Origin: Chrysemys picta bellii
Taxonomy: Eukaryota
DNA: 64,000 nucleotides
Assembly (NCBI RefSeq): GCF_011386835.1
Contig: NC_088795.1
Location: forward strand, 135,718,001-135,782,000
Direction: 5' to 3'
How positions within the stretch are numbered: the first letter of the stretch is position 1; every line of letters starts with the position of its first letter. The position numbers and the translations under genes are program-made. Under the pieces are notes generated by a model. The model searched no databases. It was not told where the DNA came from and worked only from the letters and a program-made list of their open reading frames with translations. Of the stretch, positions 26,701-64,000 are shown piece by piece.

Positions 26701-29700
26701 ACCCCCTATCCGACCCCCCCGCTCCCTGTCTCCTGACTGTCCTGACCCCTATCCACACCCCTGCCTCCTGACTGCCCCCCAGGACCACACTCCCAGTCCA
26801 ACCCGCCCCCCCCCCCGTCCCCTGACTGGCCTGCCCCCTATTCACACCCCCGCCCCCGATAGCCCCCTCCCTCCCCCGGATTCCCACACCTATCCAACCC
26901 CCCCGTTCAACGTCCCCCAACCACCACCCCCAGAATCTCCGCCCCATCCAACCGCCCCCTGTCCCCTGGAACCCCCTGCCCCTTATCCAGCCACCACCAC
27001 CTTTCCATGCTACTCAGAGCAGCAGGAGCTCGCAGCCCTGCCGCCTGGCCGGAGCCAAACACGCTGCCCGGCAGGAGCGGCGGGCCAGAGCGCTGGCGGC
27101 ATGCTGCGGCTGAGGGGCCGGGGGCTAGCCTCCCCGGCCGGAAGCTCAGGGGCTGGGCAGGACGGTCCCGCGGGCGGGAGTTTGCCCACCTCTGCTGTAG
27201 AAGGAGAAAAGGATAACAATCATTCTGTCAGAGATGCAAAGTTGTCCTGAAAATGTACCAAACATAATACCAAACTTTACCAAACATAATTCATTTGCTC
27301 AGCTTTGCCAGGACGATGTCAGTGGAGAAATGAACACCATTGTAATAGTCTGTGTGATATTGCAGAGCCGCAGAGCATGCCGCTCCTTGCCAGATCGCCC
27401 AGCACCAACAGGAAGTACCCGCCACTGCCTGTGGATAAATTGGAAGAGGAGATTAACCGGCGAATGGCAGACGACAATAAGCTCTTCCGGGAAGAATTCA
27501 ACGTGAGTGCTTTGTTAATGTCTATCTTCTGAACGCGGTTCAGTCATGCAGGGGATTGCAGTGGGTTGAACAATGAAAGGGATGTTTTGTTTATCAGGTA
27601 GAAGTACTTACCATAGCAGATTGAGCCAAATCAGTCTAGACTGCTGTTCACCTCTCAAGCTAATCAAGACGGTTTCTCTGTAGCTCTGCAAAGCAAGCAA
27701 TGTTAGATGTGGTTACAATATTGTAACCAATCTATCGCCTGTTAGGGACTTCACAGTTGTTGCTATGCTACATGTCAAGGCCACCCAGAAGTTCGCAGTT
27801 ACAAGGATAGAATTCTCATCCTCCTGTCTCCTCAGTACAGGCCCCAACTGCTTGAGCTAAAAGGGTAGCTGTTGGAGGTATAGGGCATATGATCTACAGT
27901 GGGGCAGTCTGATCTTATCCAGCAGGGGGCAGTGGTGCACAGACACACCAACCAGTTTTGTATAGAACAAGTGAATAGGTTGATACATTTCTGGCTGGGC
28001 AACATGGGTCAGAAACAGTGAAGAGGATGTCCCCCTCTCTGTGTTTGAAAGAGTACTCTGTTTATGTGACTGTCGTCCACACACCCAGCTGTTCCGGATC
28101 AGCAGGGCTGCCAGCTTTTCCTAACTTGACCTGCTGCTTGGGCCCCTTCCAGATTCCTTCACTCCCTCTTCCCCTGCATCTTCCTGTTTCCTTTGTTAAA
28201 ATAAGTCCCTGCATTATTAATTTAAACCCAGGGCGTGACAATAATTGTATTTCCATTGGGGGTTCCGCCTTCTCTGTACCATTTGCAGCCGTGTTCAGTG
28301 TTAGCCATGATGGGATGATTGCATGAATGAAGAAGTGTAATTGTGCTGATAAGACAAGATAATGAATAGGTCTCTGTTTCCAGTAACAGGTGTCCAGCTT
28401 CAGAAGAGCTGGCCCTGGAGCGTAACAAGTGGGATTCCATATTATCTGGGCCAGTGGAGAGCTAACACAGTGCAAGCCATGTCTTGTGATTAGACAGTGG
28501 GACTGGGAGTGAGCAGATCTGGAGTCTATTCCCAACTTGGCTCCTGACTCTGAGTGACTTTGGACAAGTCCCTTCAGCTCTCTGTGTTTCTGTGTATCCA
28601 CCTTCAAATCAGAGATAAGAACACCCACCTACACCTCACAGAAGTGTATGAGGCTTAATTTGCTAATGTTTAGAAAATATTTAGAGACTGACCGCCAGAA
28701 GCTGGGACTGGGTGACAGTGGATGGATCACTTGATAATTGTCCTGTTCTGTTCATTCCCTCTGGGGCACCTGGCACTGGACTAGATGGACCATTGGTGTG
28801 ACCCAGTGTGGCCATTCTTATGTTCTTAATCTCAAATAGAAAGTGCTATAGACAAGACCCTGTGTATGCGGTGGTTCCATCACTGTGGAGCGGGGCCCCA
28901 AAGTGTAAGCTTAGTTTTTCTAGTCTTTATGGCTGCAAAGAGAACTTAAAAAAACATGACATGGATGTTAAAACAATGCAGTGTTGCCTTCCAGAGTCTA
29001 CAGACTGCCAAAAACAGGAGCTGTAAGTGAGAAAGAAACTATCCTAGTTATTTCAATGTAGTGTTGTGACGTTGTGCAGTCTATATGGTTTTATAAAAAC
29101 TTGATAATAAGTTAATATAATGTAACTGAGATAGTTTTAGAGAAAATACGGTAATAAGTGAATGTAAGTAACTGGGATATGCCTCATGCAAAAGGTCTCT
29201 TGTAAGGTATCATTACAAAGCTTATAATCTACTGAGTGTGATCATCTGATTTGTATAAATGTACCACTCTTGTATCTAAAACTAGAAATATAAAATTTAA
29301 CTCTGAGGGCCTATTGTGATTGTGTAAAGTGTGGACCATTAATGATGGTTTGGAATCTTGATGACTCCCATTGTCTGCAGATGGCTGTATTTACCTGTGA
29401 GTCTTCCTGTATATGTGTGTGCTGGCAAGTGAGTAATGAAGTCTTGCAGTGACATGTGATTATGTCACCTGAACTGGAATCCATCTTTAACCTGGTGCTT
29501 TTCCAGTGAGGGGGGGTGGAAACCCAGAGAGACAAAGAGTTCCCGCCTTATGCAAAAGATATATAAAGGGGGGGAAGAGAACAGAGAAGGGGAGAAGCCA
29601 TTATGAAGAATCCCCTAGCTACCACCTGAGCTGCAACAAGAGCTGTACCAGGGGAAAGAATTGTGCCCAGGCCTGGAAGGTGTCCCGTCTGAGAAAAACT

Positions 29701-42900: not shown

Positions 42901-45900
42901 GTCCACTCCAAGGGGCTGGAGAGGCGCTCTGTGACACTGGGCACTTACATAGCACTTCCCACGCTCGGAACACTGCAGACAGACGCTAATCAGTTGCAGC
43001 ACCCCTGTGAGGTGTGTCAGTCTCACCTCCATTTCACAGAAGGGGCACTGAGGCACAGACAGGTGAGGTGATTTGTCCAAGGGGACACAGCAAGTACGTG
43101 GCAAAGGCAAACCTACTGACTCCCAGAACCTCCATTCATTCCTCCACACCATGGCACTATCCAGCTTCCACCCATTACTGGAGCATGGCTGATAACACTT
43201 TGCCCTCTGTAGCAGTGGTGCACAGACTCTTCCAGTCGTGCCCCCTTTACCAGTAATGGAATCTCCTTGTGTCCCCCCCTTCCCGCATTACTACACAGCC
43301 AAGGCTTCCTCCAGAGCAGGCTCCTTCTTCCTTGCAGCCAGGCTGCACTGCTAGGGCAGGGCCAATACCTGCCCCTCCCCCATCGAGTGTTCAGGGTGGG
43401 GGAAGGCACGTCTCTGGGGGTGGAGCCAGTGCTGGGGGTGGAGGCTGCTGGGAGTGGAACTAGGTGCCGCACACTGACCCACAGGCTGGGTGGCCTGCTG
43501 AGGTGAGTCGGGTGGAGGTGGTTTTCCCTCCGTGCCCCTTGTGGGGGCTGGCATGAGCCACCTGACATCGCTGCTTGGCCTCCCGAACATCCCTCTGTGC
43601 CCTGCTAGGGGGCACGCCCCACAGTTTCAACACCGCTGTTACATATCACCTTTCATGCAAGGATCCCCAAACCCTTTGCAAACCTTAACTAAGCCTGTGT
43701 TGCAGGCAGGTATCACCATCCCCGTTTTACAGACAGTGACACAGAGGCACAGTGAGGGCAAGGCCAATATTCTAACAAGTAGCCTCTGATTCAGGATGCA
43801 TCCGTGTTCCAGAGTCCAGCCCTGGACATTCAGTAGCAGCAGCCATGCTCAGCCATTTAAACAGCGCATGTGGCCTTCCCCATTCTCCATGGACAGGGGA
43901 AGTCCTGTTGCTCCAGCTGAACCTGCGTGTGAACACCAGAGCTCCCCAGGCAGCCAGGAGCTTCCTCGCTGAGCCACTCTGCATTGTTCCATGCATACCA
44001 GGTCTGCCCTTGTTCCCCCACCCTGTTTCCTTCAGCCTTGAGCATCTCCTGATCTGCCAGCCCATGGCCCCACTCTGTAGCTGCTCACGGAGAACATGTT
44101 ATAAGAGTTTGATCCTCTCCCAGATGGGGGGAAAGTTCCCATTGACTTTAATATGTGGTTGTGCTGATGTTGGTGCCTGGACTTTGGGTTCCATCCTTTC
44201 CACACACGCTCTCCTAGAGTGCGCTCAGTCTAAAGACAGAGAGCTGAATGGGTTCAGAGCATGGTACGGAAGCTGCCATCTCTCCCTGTAACCTCTCTCT
44301 TCCCTTTCAGATGCAATATGTTTTTATATACCAAGCACTTCTGGAGCACTATCTGTATGGAGACACAGAGCTAGAAGTGACCTCGCTAGAGACCCACGTC
44401 CAGAAAATCTACAACAAAGTGCCCGGGACCAGCAGCAACGGGCTAGAGGAGGAGTTCAAGGTGGGTTTGCCAAAACCATGCTGGCTCAGTGCCCTTGTAA
44501 AGAGAGACCAGGACCAGGTGTTTCATGAAAGTTGCATCCAATCCCATCCTGAGCCAGCAGGTTCTCCAGGGAGAGTGACAGCCAGACTCGACAAAATGCT
44601 AGGCAGTGCCTGCAGAGGGAACAGCCCTCCACTGGCACGAAGAGGCTGGATGATCTGTTTGTTCCTTAAATATCTAATAGAAGGGGGCCCTTAGTTCCCC
44701 CAGCAGGAACATTTCACTGGAGTGTGTTTGTTGTAACCAGTGCAGTTTCTCTGTAAGTGACACCTGGAAGCCAGCTGGTTTGAGGGTTTGGAGGAGACCT
44801 GTAGGGGAATGCTAGCTCAAAGATTAGGGAAAGCAGCTGTCAGCTGAGAAGCGTGGCCTGGGACTCCTGACACGAGGGAGTCCTTCAAAGCCAAAGCACA
44901 CCTGAGCTCCTAGTGCCCCCTGTCTTCCCACTGCTGGTTCCCAGCTCAACAGCCAGGACTTAACAGGAGGAGGCAGGGCTGGGGACTGGGTACAGTAGAG
45001 TGGATTCTCTGTCTAGCCACTTTTATGGCCCCCATTGCTGTAGTGTCAATGTCTGTGTCTTGCAGAGATCAGCACTAGGGAACTGTTACTATCCCTGTCT
45101 GACAGATGGGCCTCTGGGGCACACACAGATGAAGTGACTGGCCCAAGGCCACATTGGGAAACTTTGGCAGAGCCAGGAATTGAGCCAGGTCTCCTGACCA
45201 TCCTTATGAGAGTACAGAGGGGGATCGTAGCTCTGACAGCTCCATTGCAGAATACAGTGTGCACAGCTGCATACGATGAGACACAGGCCGTGGCATCATG
45301 CAGAGACCCGCCTCAAGGCTCATTATTTAAAGGAGGGGAGGGATGGCCTAGAGTAACAATGGTGAAAGCGTGAGCTCTCTCTGCTGGTGCAGATCCCAGT
45401 GGCTGGGAACTGCTGGCTTGAGGCAGGTCACTCAGACTTGGCAGATGGCTTGGATTGGCACAGGGCCTGGGCAGGCGTGCAGGCTTGGGGCGATTGGCTT
45501 GGACTGGTGTGGGGCGTTTTGACTGTTATGGTCTTGGCTTCTTTTGGTCATTTGAAAATTGTAGGTTGATTTTATTGTCCCCCATGCAGAAACTAACTTC
45601 AATCAAAATCCAGAATGACAAGATGAGAACAGGCAACTTGCCGGCAAACATGAAGAAAAATAGGGTGCTTCAAATAATTCCATGTGAGTTTTTCTTCCTT
45701 CCTGCCCAGGGCAAAGACACACTCAGGGGACAAATGAATAAATATAGAGGGTGAGTCATTTGGGAGGCAAGAGGCATCAGCAACTGCGGAGAAGGTGGCT
45801 CTCGCACCAACAGTAGTTAGTGAAGGGGATGGGGAGGAACCACTGTGAGTGGAGGGAGCAGAGTGGTCAGCATAAGATGGAAGGCTTTGAAAACAAATGA

Positions 45901-48900
45901 GGTAAATTTGAAGTGGATCCTGAAATGAATGGGGAGCCAGTGGAGGCATCTGAGCATTGAGACTGTAGCTGGGCTTACCCAGTCTGGCTTTGAGCCCTGC
46001 CCTTGCCTCAGTTTCCCCTTCTTCTCCAGTTTAGACAGGTGTTTTCTCAATAATTCTCCCCTTTTGGGAGTCTGATTTATTAAAAAAGTTGAAAACTTCC
46101 CCCAGTCTTCCTAGCTGGCTCATACCCTTGGTGGAGGGCTCTTAGACATGTCCCTGCCAAGGCTTTCCTCTAGCAGGCTGGCTCCCCACTCTCCAGCCCC
46201 CTGACCCCTTGCCTGGAAGCTAAGGGGCCTGTGACTCTGTACAGAGCAGCTCTTCTTCTCCTTTGAGTCTCTCTTCAAACTCTCCCTCACTGAGTTCATG
46301 CTGCCTTTTACATCTTCTAGTATAACTGGTTCTGAGTCATATGCTTTGATCACGTGACCTCTGTATTCATTCCCTCCACCTGGGGAGATGGGCAAAGCCT
46401 GGCTGTTGGGGCCACCTTACTCTGTGGCAGGCCATGTGCTCACGCTTCTTGGTGTTTGTGAGAAGCTGGGCATCAGCATGCAGACTAGAAGAGATGACTC
46501 ATTGCACAGTAAACAAAGTAGCCTGCCCAGGAGATCATTGAATCATAGAAGATTAGGGTTGGAAGAGACCTCAGGAGGTCATCTAGTCCAATCCCCTGCT
46601 CAAAGCAGGACCAACACCCACTAAATCATCCCAGCCAGGGCTTTGTCAAGCCTGACCTTCAAAACTCCTAAGGAAGGAGATTTCACCACCTCCCTAGGTA
46701 ACCCATTCCAGTGCTTCACCACCCTCCTAGTGAAATAGTTTTCCAAATATCCAACCTAGACTTCCCCAACTGCAACTTGAGACCATTGCTCCTTGTTCTG
46801 TCATCTACCACCACTGAGAACAGCCGAGCTCCATCCTCTTTGTAACCCCCCTTCAGGTAGTTGAAGGCTGCTATCAAATCCCCCATCACTCTTCTCTTCT
46901 GCAGAATAAATAAGCCCAGTTCCCTCAGGTGCCCGGGACCAGCAGCAACGGCCTCTCTTCATAAGTCGTGTGCCCCAGCCCCCTAATCATTTTTGTTGCC
47001 TTCTGCTGGACTCTCCAATTTGTCCACATCCTTTCTGTAGTGGGGGGGCCCAAAACTGGATGCAATACTCCAGATGTGGCCTCACCAATGCCGAATAGAG
47101 GGGAACAATCACTTCCCTCGATTTCCTGGTAATGCTTCTACTAATGAAGCCAATATGCCGTTAGCCGCCTTGGCAACAAGGGCACACTGCTGACTCATAC
47201 CCAGCTTCTCATCCACTGTAATCCCCAGGTCCCTTTCTGCAGAACTACCGCTTAGCCAGTCAATCCCCAGCCTGTAGCAATGCATGGGCTTCTTCTGTCC
47301 TAAGTGCAGAACTCTGCACTTGTCCTTCTTAGAAATCTGATGAGGTTCTTTGGCCCAATCCTCCAATTTGTCTAGGTCACTCTGGACCCTATCCCTACCC
47401 TCCAGCATATCTACCTCTCCCCCCAGCTTAGTGTCATCTGTGAACTTGCTGAGGGTGCAATCCATCCCATCATCCAGATCATTAATGAAGATGTTGAATA
47501 AAACCGGCCCCAAGACCAACCCCTGGAGCACTCCGCTTGATACCGGCTGCCAACTAGAGATCGAGCCGTTGATCACTACCCGTTGAGCCCAATGATCTAG
47601 CCAGCTTTCTATTTACCTTCTAGTCCATTCATCCAGTCCATACTACTTTAACTTGCTAGCAAGAATACTGTGAGAGACTGTATCAAAAGCTTTGCTAAAG
47701 TCAAGGTATATCACATCCACCGCTTTCCCCCATATCTGTAGAGCCAGTTATCTCATCGTAGAAGGCAATCAGGTTGGTCAGGCATGACTTGCCCTTGGTG
47801 AATCCATGTTGACAGTTCCTGATCGCCTTCCTCTCCTCCAAGTGCTTCAGAATGGATTCTTTGAGGACCTGCTCCATGATTTTGCCAGGGATTGAGATGA
47901 GGCTGACCGGTCTGTAGTTCCCCGGGGTCTCCTTCCCTTTTTTAAAGATGGGCACTATTTGCCTTTTTCCAATCGTCGAGGACCTCACCCGATCATCACG
48001 AGTTTTCAAACATAATGGCCAATGGCTCTTCAATCACATCAGCCAACTCCCTCAGCACCCTCGGATGCATTGCATCCGGCCCCATGGACTTGTGCATGTC
48101 CATCTTTTCTAAATAGTCCTTAACCTGTTCTTTCACCACTGAGGGCTGCTCACATCCTCCCTATACTGTGCTGCCACGTGCAGCAGTCTGGGAGCTGACC
48201 TTGTCTGTGAAGACCGAGGCAAAAAAAAGCATTGAATACTTCAGCTTTTCCACATCAACTGTCACTAGGTTGCCTCCCCCATTCAGTAAGGGTCCCACAC
48301 TTTCCCTGACCACCTTCTTGTTAACATACCTGTAGAAACCCTTCTTGTTACCCTTCACATCTCTTATTAGCTGCAACTCCAATTGTGCTTTGGCCTTCCT
48401 GATTATACCCCTGCATGCTTGAGCAATATTTTTTACTCCTCCCTAGTCATCTCTCCAAGTTTCCACTTCTTGTAAGCTTTCTTTTTGTGTTTAAGCTCAC
48501 CGAAGATTTCACTGTTAAGCCAAGCTGGTTGTCTGCCATATTTGCTATTCTTTCTGCACATCAGGATGGTTTGTTCCTGCACCCTCAATAAGGCTTCTTT
48601 AAAATAAAGACAGCTTTCCCGGACTCCTTTCCCCCCTCATATTAGCCTTCCAGGGGATCCTGCCCATCAGTTCCTTGAGGGAGTCAGTCTGCTTTTCTGA
48701 AGTCCAGGGTCTGTATTCTGCTGCTCTCCTTTCTTTTGTCAGGAGCCTGAACTCGACCATCTCGTGGTCACTGCTGCCCAGGTTGCCACCCACTTCTACT
48801 TCCCCTACCAATTCTTCCCTGTTTGTGAGCAGCAGGTCAAGAGGAGCAGAGCCCCTAGTTGGTTCCTCCAGCACTTGCACCAGGAAGTTTTCCCCAACGG

Positions 48901-51900
48901 TCTCCAATAACTTCCTGGATTGTCTGTGTATTGCTCTCCCAGCAGATGTCAGGGTGATTGAAGTCCCCCATGAGAACCAGGGCCTGTGATCTGGAAACTT
49001 CTGTTAGTTGTCCAAAGAAAGCCTCATCTACCTCATCCTCTTGGTCTGGTGGTCTATAGCAGATGCCCACCACAACATCACTCTTGTTGCTCTCACCTCT
49101 AAACTTAACCCAAAGACTCTCAACAGGCTTTTCTCCAGTTTCATGCTGGAGCTCTGAGCAGTTATACTACTCTCTTACATACAGTACAACTCCTCCAATT
49201 TTTCTCCCCTGCATGTCCTTTCTGAACAGTTTATACCATCCATGACAGTACTCCACTCATGTGAGTTACCCCACCAAGTCTCTGTTATTCCAGTCACATC
49301 ATAGTTCCTTGACTGTGCCAGGACTTCAATTCTTCCTGCTTGTTTCCCAGGCTTCTTGTGTTCGTGTGAAGGCACCTAAGATAACTAGCCGATTGTCCTT
49401 CTTTCTCAGTACGATTCAGGAGGCCTCCCCTGTTGCACCCTCCTCCTTGTGTCTCCTCCAGGTATCCCACTTACCTCAGGGCTTAGGTCTCCATCTCGCG
49501 GTGAACCTAGTTTAAAGCCCTCCTCACTAGATTAGCCAGCCTGCCTGCGAAGATGCTCTTCCCTCTCTTCATTAGGTGGATTCCATCTCCTCCTAGCGAT
49601 CTTTGTTCCTGGAACAACATCCCATTGTCAGAGATCCAAAGCCCTCTCTCCGACACCACCTGCATAACCATGCATTTACTTCCACAATTCGATGGTCCCT
49701 ACTTGGGCCTTTTCCTTCAACAGGGAGGATGGACGAGAACATGACTTGCACCTCAAACTCCTTTATCCTTCTTCCCAGAGCCATGTAGTCTGAAGTGACC
49801 CGCTTAAGGTCATTCTTGGCAGTATCACTGGTGCCCATGTGTAGAAGTAGGAAGATGAAGAGCCAGAGCCATGCAACACGTCATGCAGATTTTTTTTCCA
49901 TCTTATCCACCTGTTGCCTTCCATCTGATAGTTGTCTGGGACAAGGGACTGCCTTTGTTAGTTATCTGTGCAGTGTCTAGCACTGATCCGTGATCCTAGA
50001 TGCTACTGCAATACAAATTAATAATACTAATGATTTAGGCCATGTGAATTTTGGCTGTGCAAACCGTGCTCCATGTGCTTGCAAGCAATTATTCTACAGT
50101 GCCTAGATACTGATATGTGAGGGTTCAGATTGGGGGAAAATAAACACTAGTACTCTCCTAAGCCCCACTCTCTGTTGACACGAAAATGACAAGTCACCCT
50201 TAGCAGACTCTGCTGGAATTCAATGGTCTCTCTCCTTCCAATCTTTGATCCATGAAATAGTTAGCAGTTCTGACTTTTAAATTGTCATCATTGGGCTTCA
50301 GAGTCAACACCCCATTGGTCTGAAAAGGAGTGGTTCAAACTGCTGTGTAGACAGCACTGCATTAGTTCCTGGATTCACAATTCAGGTTGCAACCATGAAG
50401 GCTAAAGACTTAACCTCAACTTTCATTTAAAAGAATTAAAATGGTAGTCACTGGGGGAAAGTGCAATCTTGAACTGAGATGGCAAATGGGTGAATATTTG
50501 CTGTGTTCATGCTAAAGGAGGCAGACCATGCTGGACAATGTCCATTCCCAGTATGGTTTAGGAACCGAGCTGGTCAACATTTGAGATTTCTGGTTCATGA
50601 GAAATTTTGATGTTTCAGAATTTGAGTACCACTATTCATTTTTTTCCAGTGAAAATTTCTGACCAGCTCTATTCCGAAATAGTTTCGCCCAAGGCACAAA
50701 CACTTCACTCTGCTTTAGTGTGTCATTAACACTATGATTTATCTGTCCAAGAGCCCCAGGGTTTCCATTACTATCCATTATCTGAGCCCCCCACAATCTT
50801 TAATGAATGTATCCACACAACACACCAGTGAGGTAGGAAAATGCTGTTATCTCCAATATGTAGATGGGAACTGAGGTACAGAGAAATTAAGTGACTTGCC
50901 CAGGGTCACACAGGGAGTCTGGGATACAGCAAGGAACTGAATGGAGGTCTCCCAAGTCCCAGGCTGAATGGAGGTCTCCCAAGTCCCAGGCTCCCTGGTC
51001 ACCGAGCCATCCTTCATGTCAGTTGTTTTAATCTGATGGCACCCTTGGGAATCCTAAAGTTGATGCCCGAGTAGCAAGTGTCTGTGTTTTGAAAGTATTC
51101 CCCAAAACTCCAACCTGCTTGTCTGGCTTCTATTTTAGATGAGTTCAATCGAGTGATCATTCCAGTGAAGAGAGGTGAAGAGAACACAGACTATGTCAAT
51201 GCGTCCTTTATTGATGTAAGTTCTTGTTTCCTGTTACTCTAACCATAGACTCCACAACCTGCAGCCAATAACCCTCCACCTCAAACACAGCCAGGATGGG
51301 CCTAGTCTTGAAATGCTTGCTTTTTAGTGTGTTGGGGGTTTTTTATTGTATTTAGAGCTGATGGAAGGTGCTAGGCTGACTGGGGACTGGAGTCCCCTGT
51401 TTATCCTGATAACTTGTACAGCTCTGGCAGAAGCAGCGTGAGCTTCCATCCTGCCCCACCATGACCTGAAGAGACGCATCTCAGGGTGATTTCAGCCCCG
51501 TTAGGGTCCTCCACTGAGCCCCCCAACGAGTTTGATAGTGACTCTAATGATGTGGATAACGGTCTGCTAGGCATAGAACAGGGACTACCAGCTCCTTTCA
51601 TTTGGCCACTGAACATCCACCAGACAATGCAATGTAATAATAATACACGGCTCTCAAAGCCCTTGACAAAGGCAGATCAACCTCATTGTCCTCAGACTGG
51701 AGTAAATGAGGCAAAGAGGTTAAGTGATCTACTCACCAAGGGCTAGATCGCACAGTCCTTGCTGACAGGTAGTCCTGTTGGTGTCAACGGGAAGCCTCTC
51801 ATTAGTATTCATCTACACGCAATCCACCCAACAGTGAGTAAGTGCTATAGGACCCAGGTCTTTTGAAACCCAATCCTGCCTCTAACCCCAGGATGACAGT

Positions 51901-62680: not shown

Positions 62681-64000
62681 AGAAAATAATGGCCATACTG
62701 GGTCAGACCAAAGGTCCATCTAGCCCAGTATCCTGTCTTCTGACAGTGGCCAATGCCAGGTACCCCACAGAGAATGAATAGAACAGGCAATCATGAAGTG
62801 ATCCATCCCCTGTCGCCCATTCCCAGCTTCTGGCAAACAGGCTAGGGACACCATCACTGCCCATCCTGGCAGCCATTGATGGACCTATCCTCCATGAATA
62901 TATCTAGTTCTTTTTTGAACCCTGTTATAGTCTTGGCCTTCACAACATCCTCTAGCAAGGAGTTCCACAGGTTGACTGTGTGTTGTGTGAAAAAATACTT
63001 CCTTTTGTTTGTTTTAAATCTGCTGCCTAGTAATTTCATTGGGTGACCCCCAGTTCTTGTGTTATGAGAAGGAGTAAACAACAGTTCCTTATTTACTTTC
63101 TCCACACCAGTCATGATTTTATAAACCTCTATCATATCTCCCCTTAGTTGTCTCTTTTCCAAGCTGAAAAGTCCCGGTCTTATTAATCTCTCCTCATACG
63201 GCAGCTGTTCCATACCCCTAATCATTTTTGTTGTCCTTTTCTGAACCTTTTCTAAGTCCAATATATCTTTTTTGAGATGGGGCGACCACATCTGCACGCA
63301 GTATTCAAGATGTGGGCGTACCATGGGTTTTTATAGAGGCAATATGATATTTTCTGTCTCATTATCTATCCCTTAATGATTTCCAACATTCTGTTTGAGT
63401 GAATGTTTTCAGAGAACTATCCACAATGACTCCAAGATCTTCCTTGAGTGGTGACAGCTAATGTAGACCCCCCTCATTTTATATTCATAGTTGGGATTAT
63501 GTTTTCCAATGTGCGTTACTTTGCATTTATCAACATTGAATTTCATCTGCCATTTTGTTGCCCAGTCACCCAGTTTTGAGAAATTCTTTTGTAGCTCTTA
63601 GCAGTCTGCTTGGGACTTAACTATCTTGAGTAGTTTTGTATCCTCTGCAAATTTTGCCATGTCACTGTTTATCCCTTTTTCCAGATCATTTATGAATATG
63701 TCAAATAGGACTGGGCCCAGTACAGACCTCTGGGGGACACCACTATTTACCTCTCTCCATTCTGCAAACTGACCATTTATTCCTACCATTTGTTTCCTAT
63801 CTTTTAACCAGTTACCAATCCATGAAAGGACCTTCCCTCTTATCCCATGACTGCTTACTTTGCTTAAGAGCCTTTGGTGAGGGACCTTGTCAAAGGCTTT
63901 CTGAAAATCTAAGTACATTATATCCACTGTATCCCCCTTGTCCACATGCTTGTTGACCCCCTCAGAGAATTCTAGTAGATTGGTGAGGCATGATTTCCCT
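62681..64000 (-). mobile_element. CR1 LINE 3' part (RT), runs off window end
   Basis: ORFs 63598..63945 (YLDFQKAFDKVPH...GPVLFDIFINDL) and 62854..63324 ([13 protein letters not shown]...YEERL), plus a CR1 3' UTR. Confidence 0.95.

What the first reader, a model, noticed from the sequence alone, without database searches (positions are those of the whole stretch)
46929..46951. Exact 23-nt piece of PTPRA exon 15 pasted into a CR1 LINE 2.5 kb downstream
Seen: GTGCCCGGGACCAGCAGCAACGG occurs in exon 15 (44419-44441, encoding VPGTSSNG) and again, identical and on the same strand, at 46929-46951 inside the antisense CR1. The flanks differ immediately on both sides. Removing exactly these 23 nt restores the CR1 ORF2 reading [13 protein letters not shown] (the other CR1 at 62854-63324 has PYEERL...GLFSL), so this is a clean insertion with no deletion, TSD or obvious microhomology. 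A chance 23-mer match in 64 kb is about 64000^2/4^23, roughly 6e-5. Inference: a locally templated insertion from break repair copying nearby DNA or the nascent PTPRA transcript, possibly by CR1 reverse transcriptase. The copy lands directly after a sense-strand ccagttccctcAG, an acceptor-like context. Caution: the piece has the exact form G-N19-NGG (a Cas9 protospacer plus PAM), so an assembly, polishing or in-silico artefact must be excluded.
Basis: partly seen in the sequence, partly recalled or inferred. Interest (0 to 1): 0.8.

Follow-up and report, generated by a model that had tools for sequence, protein, structure and literature searches.

The report
Exon-derived 23-base repair scar in intron
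A 23-base piece of a PTPRA coding exon was copied, long ago and in the germline, into a decayed CR1 retrotransposon 2.5 kb downstream in the same gene; it is a real but ordinary scar of DNA break repair, with no sign of a function.

Summary
GTGCCCGGGACCAGCAGCAACGG occurs exactly twice in the 2.37-Gb assembly: in a PTPRA coding exon (44419-44441) and inside an antisense CR1 (46929-46951). All 28 aligned CR1 paralogs lack these 23 bases and run straight across the site. It is therefore a clean insertion private to this copy, with no target loss, no duplication and 0-1 base of junction homology.

It is not an assembly or in-silico artefact. Contigs from two other public runs, labelled as two other organisms, bridge both junctions. 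One of them carries a CpG-to-CpA change inside the insert, while its exon copy is unchanged at that site.

The best reading is filler DNA laid down when a germline break in the CR1 was rejoined. The filler was copied from the exon 2.5 kb upstream, or from the nascent PTPRA transcript.

- A first-strand template jump by the CR1 reverse transcriptase onto PTPRA mRNA predicts the opposite orientation.
- The acceptor-like context is plain CR1 sequence, present in the paralogs.
- The Cas9-like form has a 1-in-64 chance.

I found no evidence of function. This is a new member of a known kind. First-reader notes elsewhere in this genome list similar scars; I did not check them.

The parts
44311..44460 (+). 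PTPRA coding exon for the end of phosphatase domain D1 and the D1-D2 linker; it holds the donor sequence.
   Evidence: It translates to [50 protein letters not shown]. This matches PTPRA chain 6uzt_A residues 280-329 at E 2.4e-26, well ahead of PTPRE. A spliced contig in run X25 joins 44460 to 45590 with GT..AG ends.
44419..44441 (+). Donor 23-mer, intact in place (copy and paste, not cut and paste).
   Evidence: It encodes part of VPGTSSNG, which is conserved with human IPGTSNNG.
45590..45683 (+). Next PTPRA exon. The insertion therefore lies in the intron after this exon, not in the intron next to the donor exon.
   Evidence: The sequence reads [31 protein letters not shown], with an AG acceptor and a GT donor. 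X25 contig record 20 and the spliced joint support it.
46929..46951 (+). Inserted copy of the exon 23-mer, in the same orientation as the donor and 2,510 bases downstream. Placement may shift by one G (46928-46950).
   Evidence: It is absent from 28 CR1 paralogs. It is bridged by contigs of runs X25 and X1.
46540..49073 (-). Decayed CR1 LINE, antisense to PTPRA, that received the insertion about 390 bases from its 3' end. The right-hand limit given is a minimum.
   Evidence: The CR1 3' tail begins near 46540. RVT_1 matches lie at 47109-47576 and 47701-48033, and an endonuclease match at 48855-49073, all on the - strand. There were 3,277 first-look candidates in the genome. The frame is broken into many short ORFs.

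Best explanation
This is a real, heritable 23-base insertion, and I read it as a repair scar.

Inferred sequence of events: a double-strand break arose in the germline inside an already resident, decaying CR1 in a PTPRA intron. The ends were rejoined by end joining without losing any target base. The gap was bridged with filler copied from the PTPRA exon 2.5 kb upstream on the same chromosome, in the same orientation. The donor stayed intact.

How the filler was made is not resolved. My odds within this explanation:
- about half: a repair polymerase (Pol theta-like, or a replication-type template switch) primed on the exon DNA and then returned;
- about a quarter: the same synthesis used the nascent PTPRA pre-mRNA as template. 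That is possible only for synthesis of the - strand from the right-hand end;
- about a quarter: a free short DNA or cDNA fragment was ligated in.

Shown: the copy exists, it is private to this CR1 copy, it is clean, it is present in other samples, and it is older than the split between the window's lineage and that of run X25.

Inferred: the break, the pathway and the template. The insert has no evident function. It sits in an intron inside a dead retrotransposon.
For: - Exact 23/23 identity, with only two exact copies in 2.37 Gb. About 6e-5 pairs are expected by chance in the window.
- All 28 paralogs lack it and are continuous across the site. There is no target-site duplication, poly(A) or deletion.
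- The donor exon is ancestral and intact.
- Independent samples carry it. X25 contig record 23 (174 nt, depth 26.9, like the single-copy intron depth of 21-26) spans 46886-47054 with only 6 gaps. It has G>A at 46935, a CpG site. The exon contig of the same run shows only 44415 C>T and nothing at the matching exon base. X1 contig record 4 spans 46810-46998 with 3 gaps.
- X25 differs from the window at 10 of about 2,480 unique flanking bases, so it is another haplotype or lineage.
- Among isolated exact repeats of 18 nt or more in the window, this is the only non-tandem direct pair.
- Known precedents: Pol theta inserts of 3-30 bp identical to nearby DNA (PMC7165422); inserts of 2-35 bp templated from adjacent sequence or from many kb away in class-switch joining (PMC7454005); heritable patch insertions without duplication or poly(A), enriched for transcribed donors (PMC5110952); Pol theta end joining as a germline source of indels (PMC4490562).
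Against: - Canonical Pol theta inserts use templates within about 50 bp. Their single synthesis tracts are rarely over 10 bp, and they usually start or end in microhomology (PMC7165422). Here the template is 2,510 bp away, the tract is 23 bases in one piece, and junction homology is 0-1 base. At best it is 2 bases (CT) behind a terminal mismatch at the right junction.
- No deletion at the target is unusual for resected ends.
- No sample with the CR1 but without the insert was seen. Runs X2 and X3 gave no informative contig at the site. So it is not shown that the CR1 ever existed without the 23 bases.
- The evidence from other samples rests on contigs, not raw reads.
Confidence: 0.78

Rival explanations
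1. The piece was added while this CR1 copy was being integrated. The CR1 reverse transcriptase, or the polymerase making the second strand, jumped from its template onto a nearby PTPRA molecule and back.
For: The host element is a LINE with reverse transcriptase and endonuclease remnants, and it sits in a transcribed gene (spliced PTPRA contigs in X25). A jump onto PTPRA RNA during second-strand synthesis would give the observed orientation. No sample with the CR1 but without the insert was found.
Against: - First-strand cDNA of this copy is the + strand. A jump onto PTPRA mRNA would therefore write PTPRA antisense on the + strand, the opposite of what is seen.
- To my own knowledge, known LINE template-switch chimeras sit at the 5' junction. 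This piece is internal, about 390 bases from the 3' end, and the CR1 resumes at the very next base.
- Two precise jumps with no loss of CR1 sequence are needed.
Confidence: 0.1
2. It is an assembly, polishing or in-silico artefact, or an engineered sequence, as the G-N19-NGG form might suggest.
For: The 23-mer has the form of a Cas9 protospacer plus PAM. No run held all sampled words of the stretch, so the assembled sample itself was not examined.
Against: Contigs from two other runs under two other organism labels bridge both junctions. One carries its own CpG substitution inside the insert and 0.4% differences in the flanks. The G-N19-NGG form has a 1/64 chance per strand.
Confidence: 0.02
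3. It is a chance match, or part of the CR1 subfamily sequence, or a common genomic word.
For: The 23-mer is CAG-rich. Its CpG-decayed form has four unrelated near-matches in the genome.
Against: About 6e-5 exact pairs are expected in the window, and no shuffle gave a match. There are only two exact copies in the genome. The 23-mer is absent from all 28 aligned paralogs, and it coincides exactly with a 23-base gain relative to them.
Confidence: 0.005
4. The insert has been put to use, for example as a cryptic exon start behind the acceptor-like CR1 sequence, or as a 23-base antisense match to PTPRA mRNA in transcripts of the CR1 strand.
For: An AG with a pyrimidine tract lies directly upstream. 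A - strand transcript of this copy would carry 23 bases complementary to the exon. The insert is kept in at least two other samples.
Against: - The acceptor-like sequence is in the CR1 paralogs too.
- No joint into 46929 is among those listed for the RNA-containing run X25, though 92 further joints were not shown.
- X25 carries a substitution inside the insert, which fits neutral drift.
- Neither strand of the 23-mer begins with U, as most piRNAs do (my own knowledge).
Confidence: 0.02

Closest known systems
Pol theta-mediated end-joining templated insertions (TINS, 'filler DNA')
   Same: A short insert (here 23 bp, within the 3-30 bp range) identical to other DNA on the same chromosome, with the donor left intact and the event heritable. 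Pol theta end joining is a documented germline indel source (PMC4490562, PMC7165422). Templates many kb away are reported for class-switch junctions (PMC7454005).
   Different: The template is 2.5 kb away rather than within about 50 bp. The tract is a single 23 bases rather than chained tracts of 10 bp or less. Microhomology is 0-1 base. There is no accompanying deletion.
Class 2 templated sequence insertion polymorphisms (Onozawa and Aplan; PMC5110952)
   Same: A heritable patch at a presumed break, with no target-site duplication, no poly(A), a transcribed donor and an intact donor site.
   Different: Those donors are described as distant genomic regions, and in the experimental system they mapped to 18 of 24 chromosomes. 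Here the donor is 2.5 kb away in the same gene. The junctions show none of the usual microdeletion or untemplated bases, unless one G counts as untemplated.
LINE reverse-transcriptase template switching during target-primed reverse transcription
   Same: A foreign, transcribed sequence embedded in a LINE copy.
   Different: The orientation is opposite to that expected for a first-strand jump onto mRNA. The position is internal, not at the 5' junction. The LINE sequence resumes at exactly the next base.
Replication-based template switching (FoSTeS/MMBIR)
   Same: A copy of nearby sequence on the same chromosome, inserted in direct orientation with the donor kept (PMC8421209 describes templated insertions from MMBIR).
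   Different: By my own knowledge, those events normally show 2-5 bases of microhomology at each switch. No such microhomology or further rearrangement is seen here.

Membership tests
Pol theta-mediated templated insertion (TINS) | The insert is identical to other sequence on the same molecule and the donor is retained. | tested here: met
   23/23 identity, with the donor exon intact.
Pol theta-mediated templated insertion (TINS) | Insert size of about 3-30 bp. | tested here: met
   23 bp; the range is taken from PMC7165422.
Pol theta-mediated templated insertion (TINS) | The template lies within about 50 bp of the break. | tested here: not met
   The start-to-start distance is 2,510 bp. Templates many kb away are known only from class-switch junctions (PMC7454005).
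Pol theta-mediated templated insertion (TINS) | Microhomology where synthesis starts and/or where the ends are finally joined. | tested here: inconclusive
   There is 0 nt of homology if G46928 is the original CR1 base. The alternative is 1 nt (G) at the right junction plus one unexplained G at the left. A third reading is CT behind one mismatch at the right junction.
Pol theta-mediated templated insertion (TINS) | Dependence on POLQ. | not testable with these tools
   This needs genetics.
Class 2 templated sequence insertion (TSIP) | No target-site duplication, no poly(A) tail and no LINE endonuclease site signature. | tested here: met
   The flanks are continuous CR1 with nothing duplicated, and the insert has no A-run.
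Class 2 templated sequence insertion (TSIP) | The donor is transcribed sequence and is left intact. | tested here: met
   The donor is a coding exon, seen spliced in run X25.
Class 2 templated sequence insertion (TSIP) | Heritable, and shared between individuals. | tested here: met
   Bridging contigs in two other runs under two organism labels.
Class 2 templated sequence insertion (TSIP) | The donor lies in a distant genomic region. | tested here: not met
   The donor is 2.5 kb upstream in the same gene.
Class 2 templated sequence insertion (TSIP) | An RNA intermediate. | not testable with these tools
   The piece lies wholly within one exon (44311-44460), so it crosses no splice junction that could prove an RNA origin.
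LINE RT template-switch chimera | The foreign piece lies in the same sense as the LINE RNA, as expected for a first-strand jump onto an mRNA. | tested here: not met
   The piece is PTPRA-sense on the + strand, and the CR1 sense strand is -.
LINE RT template-switch chimera | The insert is present in every genome that has this CR1 copy. | tested here: inconclusive
   The two samples with informative contigs both have it. Runs X2 and X3 gave no contig over the site.

The most novel reading that the evidence does not exclude
The filler was reverse-transcribed from the nascent PTPRA pre-mRNA, which stays tethered to the polymerase while the downstream intron is transcribed. On this reading the scar records RNA-templated break repair in a vertebrate germline. 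Pol theta has reverse transcriptase activity, but such repair is not established in vertebrates (PMC9962433).

The same-sense, upstream-exon-to-downstream-intron geometry fits this reading. Unchecked first-reader notes in the same genome list two more exon-into-own-intron copies (s1-323812, s1-318563). A recurrent, transcription-oriented signature could therefore be tested genome-wide.
Probability: 0.2. Interest if true: 0.6.

Novelty: new member of a known kind. Interest (0 to 1): 0.3.

Why it matters
On its own this is a tidy natural example of a short insertion templated from kilobases away. It can be read with unusual confidence because the recipient is a repeat whose many paralogs show the undisturbed sequence, and because the donor is a conserved exon that fixes the direction of copying.

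It also shows that such scars persist. The event predates the split between the window's lineage and that of run X25.

Its wider value would come only from numbers. A genome-wide census of private inserts in repeat copies would give three things:
- the rate and range of templated repair in a slowly evolving vertebrate;
- whether donors are biased toward upstream, same-strand, transcribed sequence;
- possibly a piece that crosses an exon-exon junction, which would prove an RNA template.

Tried and rejected
- **Copies ending exactly at 46928.** CR1 copies matching at 96-97% (93% over the longer stretch) looked as if two elements met at that base. They are simply 5'-truncated CR1 copies that end about 20 bases past the site.
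- **Near-match on contig C1 (L003).** It agrees at 25 of 27 bases, including two flank bases on each side, and both mismatches are at CpG sites. I considered it as a third, older copy. It lies in single-copy, unrelated sequence, and the CpG-decayed form of the 23-mer has four other unrelated near-matches. I rejected it as composition-driven chance.
- **Megabase-scale scan for similar local copies.** A scan of the 109 kb of other loci already held found only tandem duplications and repeat pairs.
- **Other assemblies.** An exact look-up of the 53-residue ORF across the insert found nothing. An exact junction pattern in metagenome contigs found nothing.
- **Runs X2 and X3 (3-7% diverged species).** They gave no contig over 46935 and no 23-base 'left out' call. 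They say nothing about presence or absence.
- **Second run search on junction words only.** It found one holder, X25.
- **Transposon excision footprint.** Rejected: no duplicated target bases remain.
- **Small-RNA origin.** The size fits, but neither strand starts with U, and nothing here can test it.

Full report
**Observation**

The 23-mer GTGCCCGGGACCAGCAGCAACGG is present exactly at 44419-44441 and 46929-46951 on the + strand. No dinucleotide shuffle gave a match. The neighbouring bases differ at once on both sides. The only further agreement is CT two bases beyond the right end. About 6e-5 exact 23-mer pairs are expected by chance in 64 kb. In the whole 2.37-Gb assembly these are the only exact copies. 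Two sites with two mismatches lie in unrelated sequence.

**The donor**

Positions 44311-44460 translate to [50 protein letters not shown]. This matches receptor tyrosine phosphatase alpha (6uzt_A residues 280-329, E 2.4e-26) far better than phosphatase epsilon. The human protein has IPGTSNNG at the same place. The exon sequence is therefore ancestral and must be the source, not the copy.

The next exon is 45590-45683. The recipient site therefore lies one intron further on than the donor exon. I could not check the exon number.

**The recipient**

The region from about 46540 to at least 49073 is a decayed CR1 on the - strand.
- Its 3' tail begins near 46540.
- Reverse transcriptase and endonuclease remnants lie on the - strand.
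- The frame is broken into many short ORFs.

A genome search gave 3,277 first-look candidates. The 28 paralogs that span the site all lack the 23 bases and read straight through. There is no loss of CR1 bases, no duplicated target and no A-run. On the - strand, the pieces on either side of the insert each read typical CR1 ORF2 C-terminal sequence in frame up to the insert. Because a G stands at both ends, the insert can be placed at 46929-46951 or 46928-46950.

Copies that seemed to end exactly at 46928 are only 5'-truncated elements ending about 20 bases further on.

**Real or artefact?**

I laid contigs of four public runs on 44200-47900.

Run X25 covers the unique intron at a depth of 21-26. 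It differs from the window at 10 of about 2,480 unique bases. It also holds a spliced joint from 44460 to 45590 with GT..AG ends, so it contains PTPRA RNA.
- Its contig record 23 (174 nt, depth 26.9) spans 46886-47054 with only six gaps, so it carries the insert.
- That contig has G>A at 46935, a CpG position.
- The exon contig of the same run shows no change at the matching exon base.

Run X1, under another organism label, has a 235-nt contig spanning 46810-46998 with three gaps.

Both contigs have more than 31 bases on each side of both junctions. The insert therefore exists in other samples, and it has had time to pick up its own substitution. It is older than the split between the window's lineage and that of X25.

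Runs X2 and X3 come from species 3-7% diverged. They gave nothing informative at the site.

The Cas9-like form G-N19-NGG has a 1/64 prior and carries no weight once the insert is seen elsewhere.

**Mechanism**

The donor is intact, the target lost nothing, and there is no duplication or poly(A). This is the anatomy of filler DNA at a rejoined break.

Comparison with known classes:
- *Pol theta end joining.* It makes inserts of 3-30 bp identical to nearby DNA, but normally from within about 50 bp, in tracts of 10 bp or less, with microhomology (PMC7165422). Templates many kb away are reported at class-switch junctions (PMC7454005). The pathway is a germline indel source in C. elegans (PMC4490562).
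- *Class 2 templated sequence insertions.* In humans these are heritable patches without duplication or poly(A), enriched for transcribed donors. They come from distant genomic regions (PMC5110952).

This case sits between the two: the size of the first, the clean patch-like junctions of the second, and a donor 2.5 kb away in the same gene.

Junction homology is 0 bases if G46928 is the original CR1 base. Otherwise it is 1 base at the right junction, with one unexplained G at the left.

**Orientation**

Orientation constrains the reverse-transcriptase idea. The first-strand cDNA of this CR1 is the + strand. A jump onto PTPRA mRNA would therefore write the antisense of PTPRA on the + strand, and the opposite is seen.

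Synthesis of the - strand could use PTPRA RNA. That could be second-strand synthesis at integration, or repair synthesis from the right-hand end of a later break. Pol theta can reverse transcribe, although RNA-templated repair is not established in vertebrates (PMC9962433). The piece lies within one exon, so RNA and DNA templates cannot be told apart.

**Function**

None is apparent.
- The acceptor-like ccagttccctcAG is ordinary CR1 sequence, present in the paralogs.
- No joint into 46929 is among those listed for the RNA-containing run, though 92 further joints were not shown.
- The X25 substitution inside the insert fits neutral drift.

**How common?**

Among isolated exact repeats of 18 bases or more in the window, this is the only non-tandem direct pair. 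A scan of 109 kb of other loci found none of this kind.

First-reader notes of this scan list several other templated scars in the same genome. Two of them are exon-into-own-intron copies. They are unchecked leads, and readers notice exons more readily than other sequence, so they are no measure of frequency.

**Verdict**

This is a real, old, neutral repair scar and a new member of a known kind. It is neat because both donor and recipient can be read unambiguously. On its own it is not surprising.

Noticed in passing
L003:1499-1525 (G000:C1:43015011-43015037): A 27-base stretch agrees with window 46927-46953 at 25 positions. Both differences are CpG-to-CpA changes, and two flank bases on each side also match. 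The context is single-copy and unrelated, and the CpG-decayed 23-mer has four other near-matches in the genome. It is probably chance.
   Followed up: yes
window 50937-50990: An exact tandem duplication of a 27-base unit (CTGAATGGAGGTCTCCCAAGTCCCAGG, twice), apparently a simple recent duplication.
   Followed up: partly
window 27710-27729: A perfect 20-base palindrome, TGGTTACAATATTGTAACCA, with unrelated flanks.
   Followed up: no
window 44460/45590: Run X25 holds a spliced contig joining these two PTPRA exons (GT..AG). It also covers the introns at about a tenth of the exon depth. The CR1 with its insert is therefore transcribed as part of the pre-mRNA in that sample.
   Followed up: partly
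window 46965-46968: This CR1 copy reads TCGTG where all 28 aligned paralogs read TCATG (or TTATG, GATG). This is a private A-to-G change that creates a CpG 15 bases from the insert.
   Followed up: no
L028:1501-1800: One CR1 paralog carries a private 10-base tandem duplication (AAACTAAATA) about 25 bases from the position homologous to the insertion site. The same locus also holds a second CR1 fragment.
   Followed up: no
same genome, other windows (notes s1-323812, s1-318563, s1-329900, s1-329967, s1-330036, s1-312535): First-reader notes list further short templated copies. They include 61 bp of a KMT2A exon in its own intron and copies of the 3' end of an exon 12 in intron 12. I could not fetch or check any of them here.
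   Followed up: no
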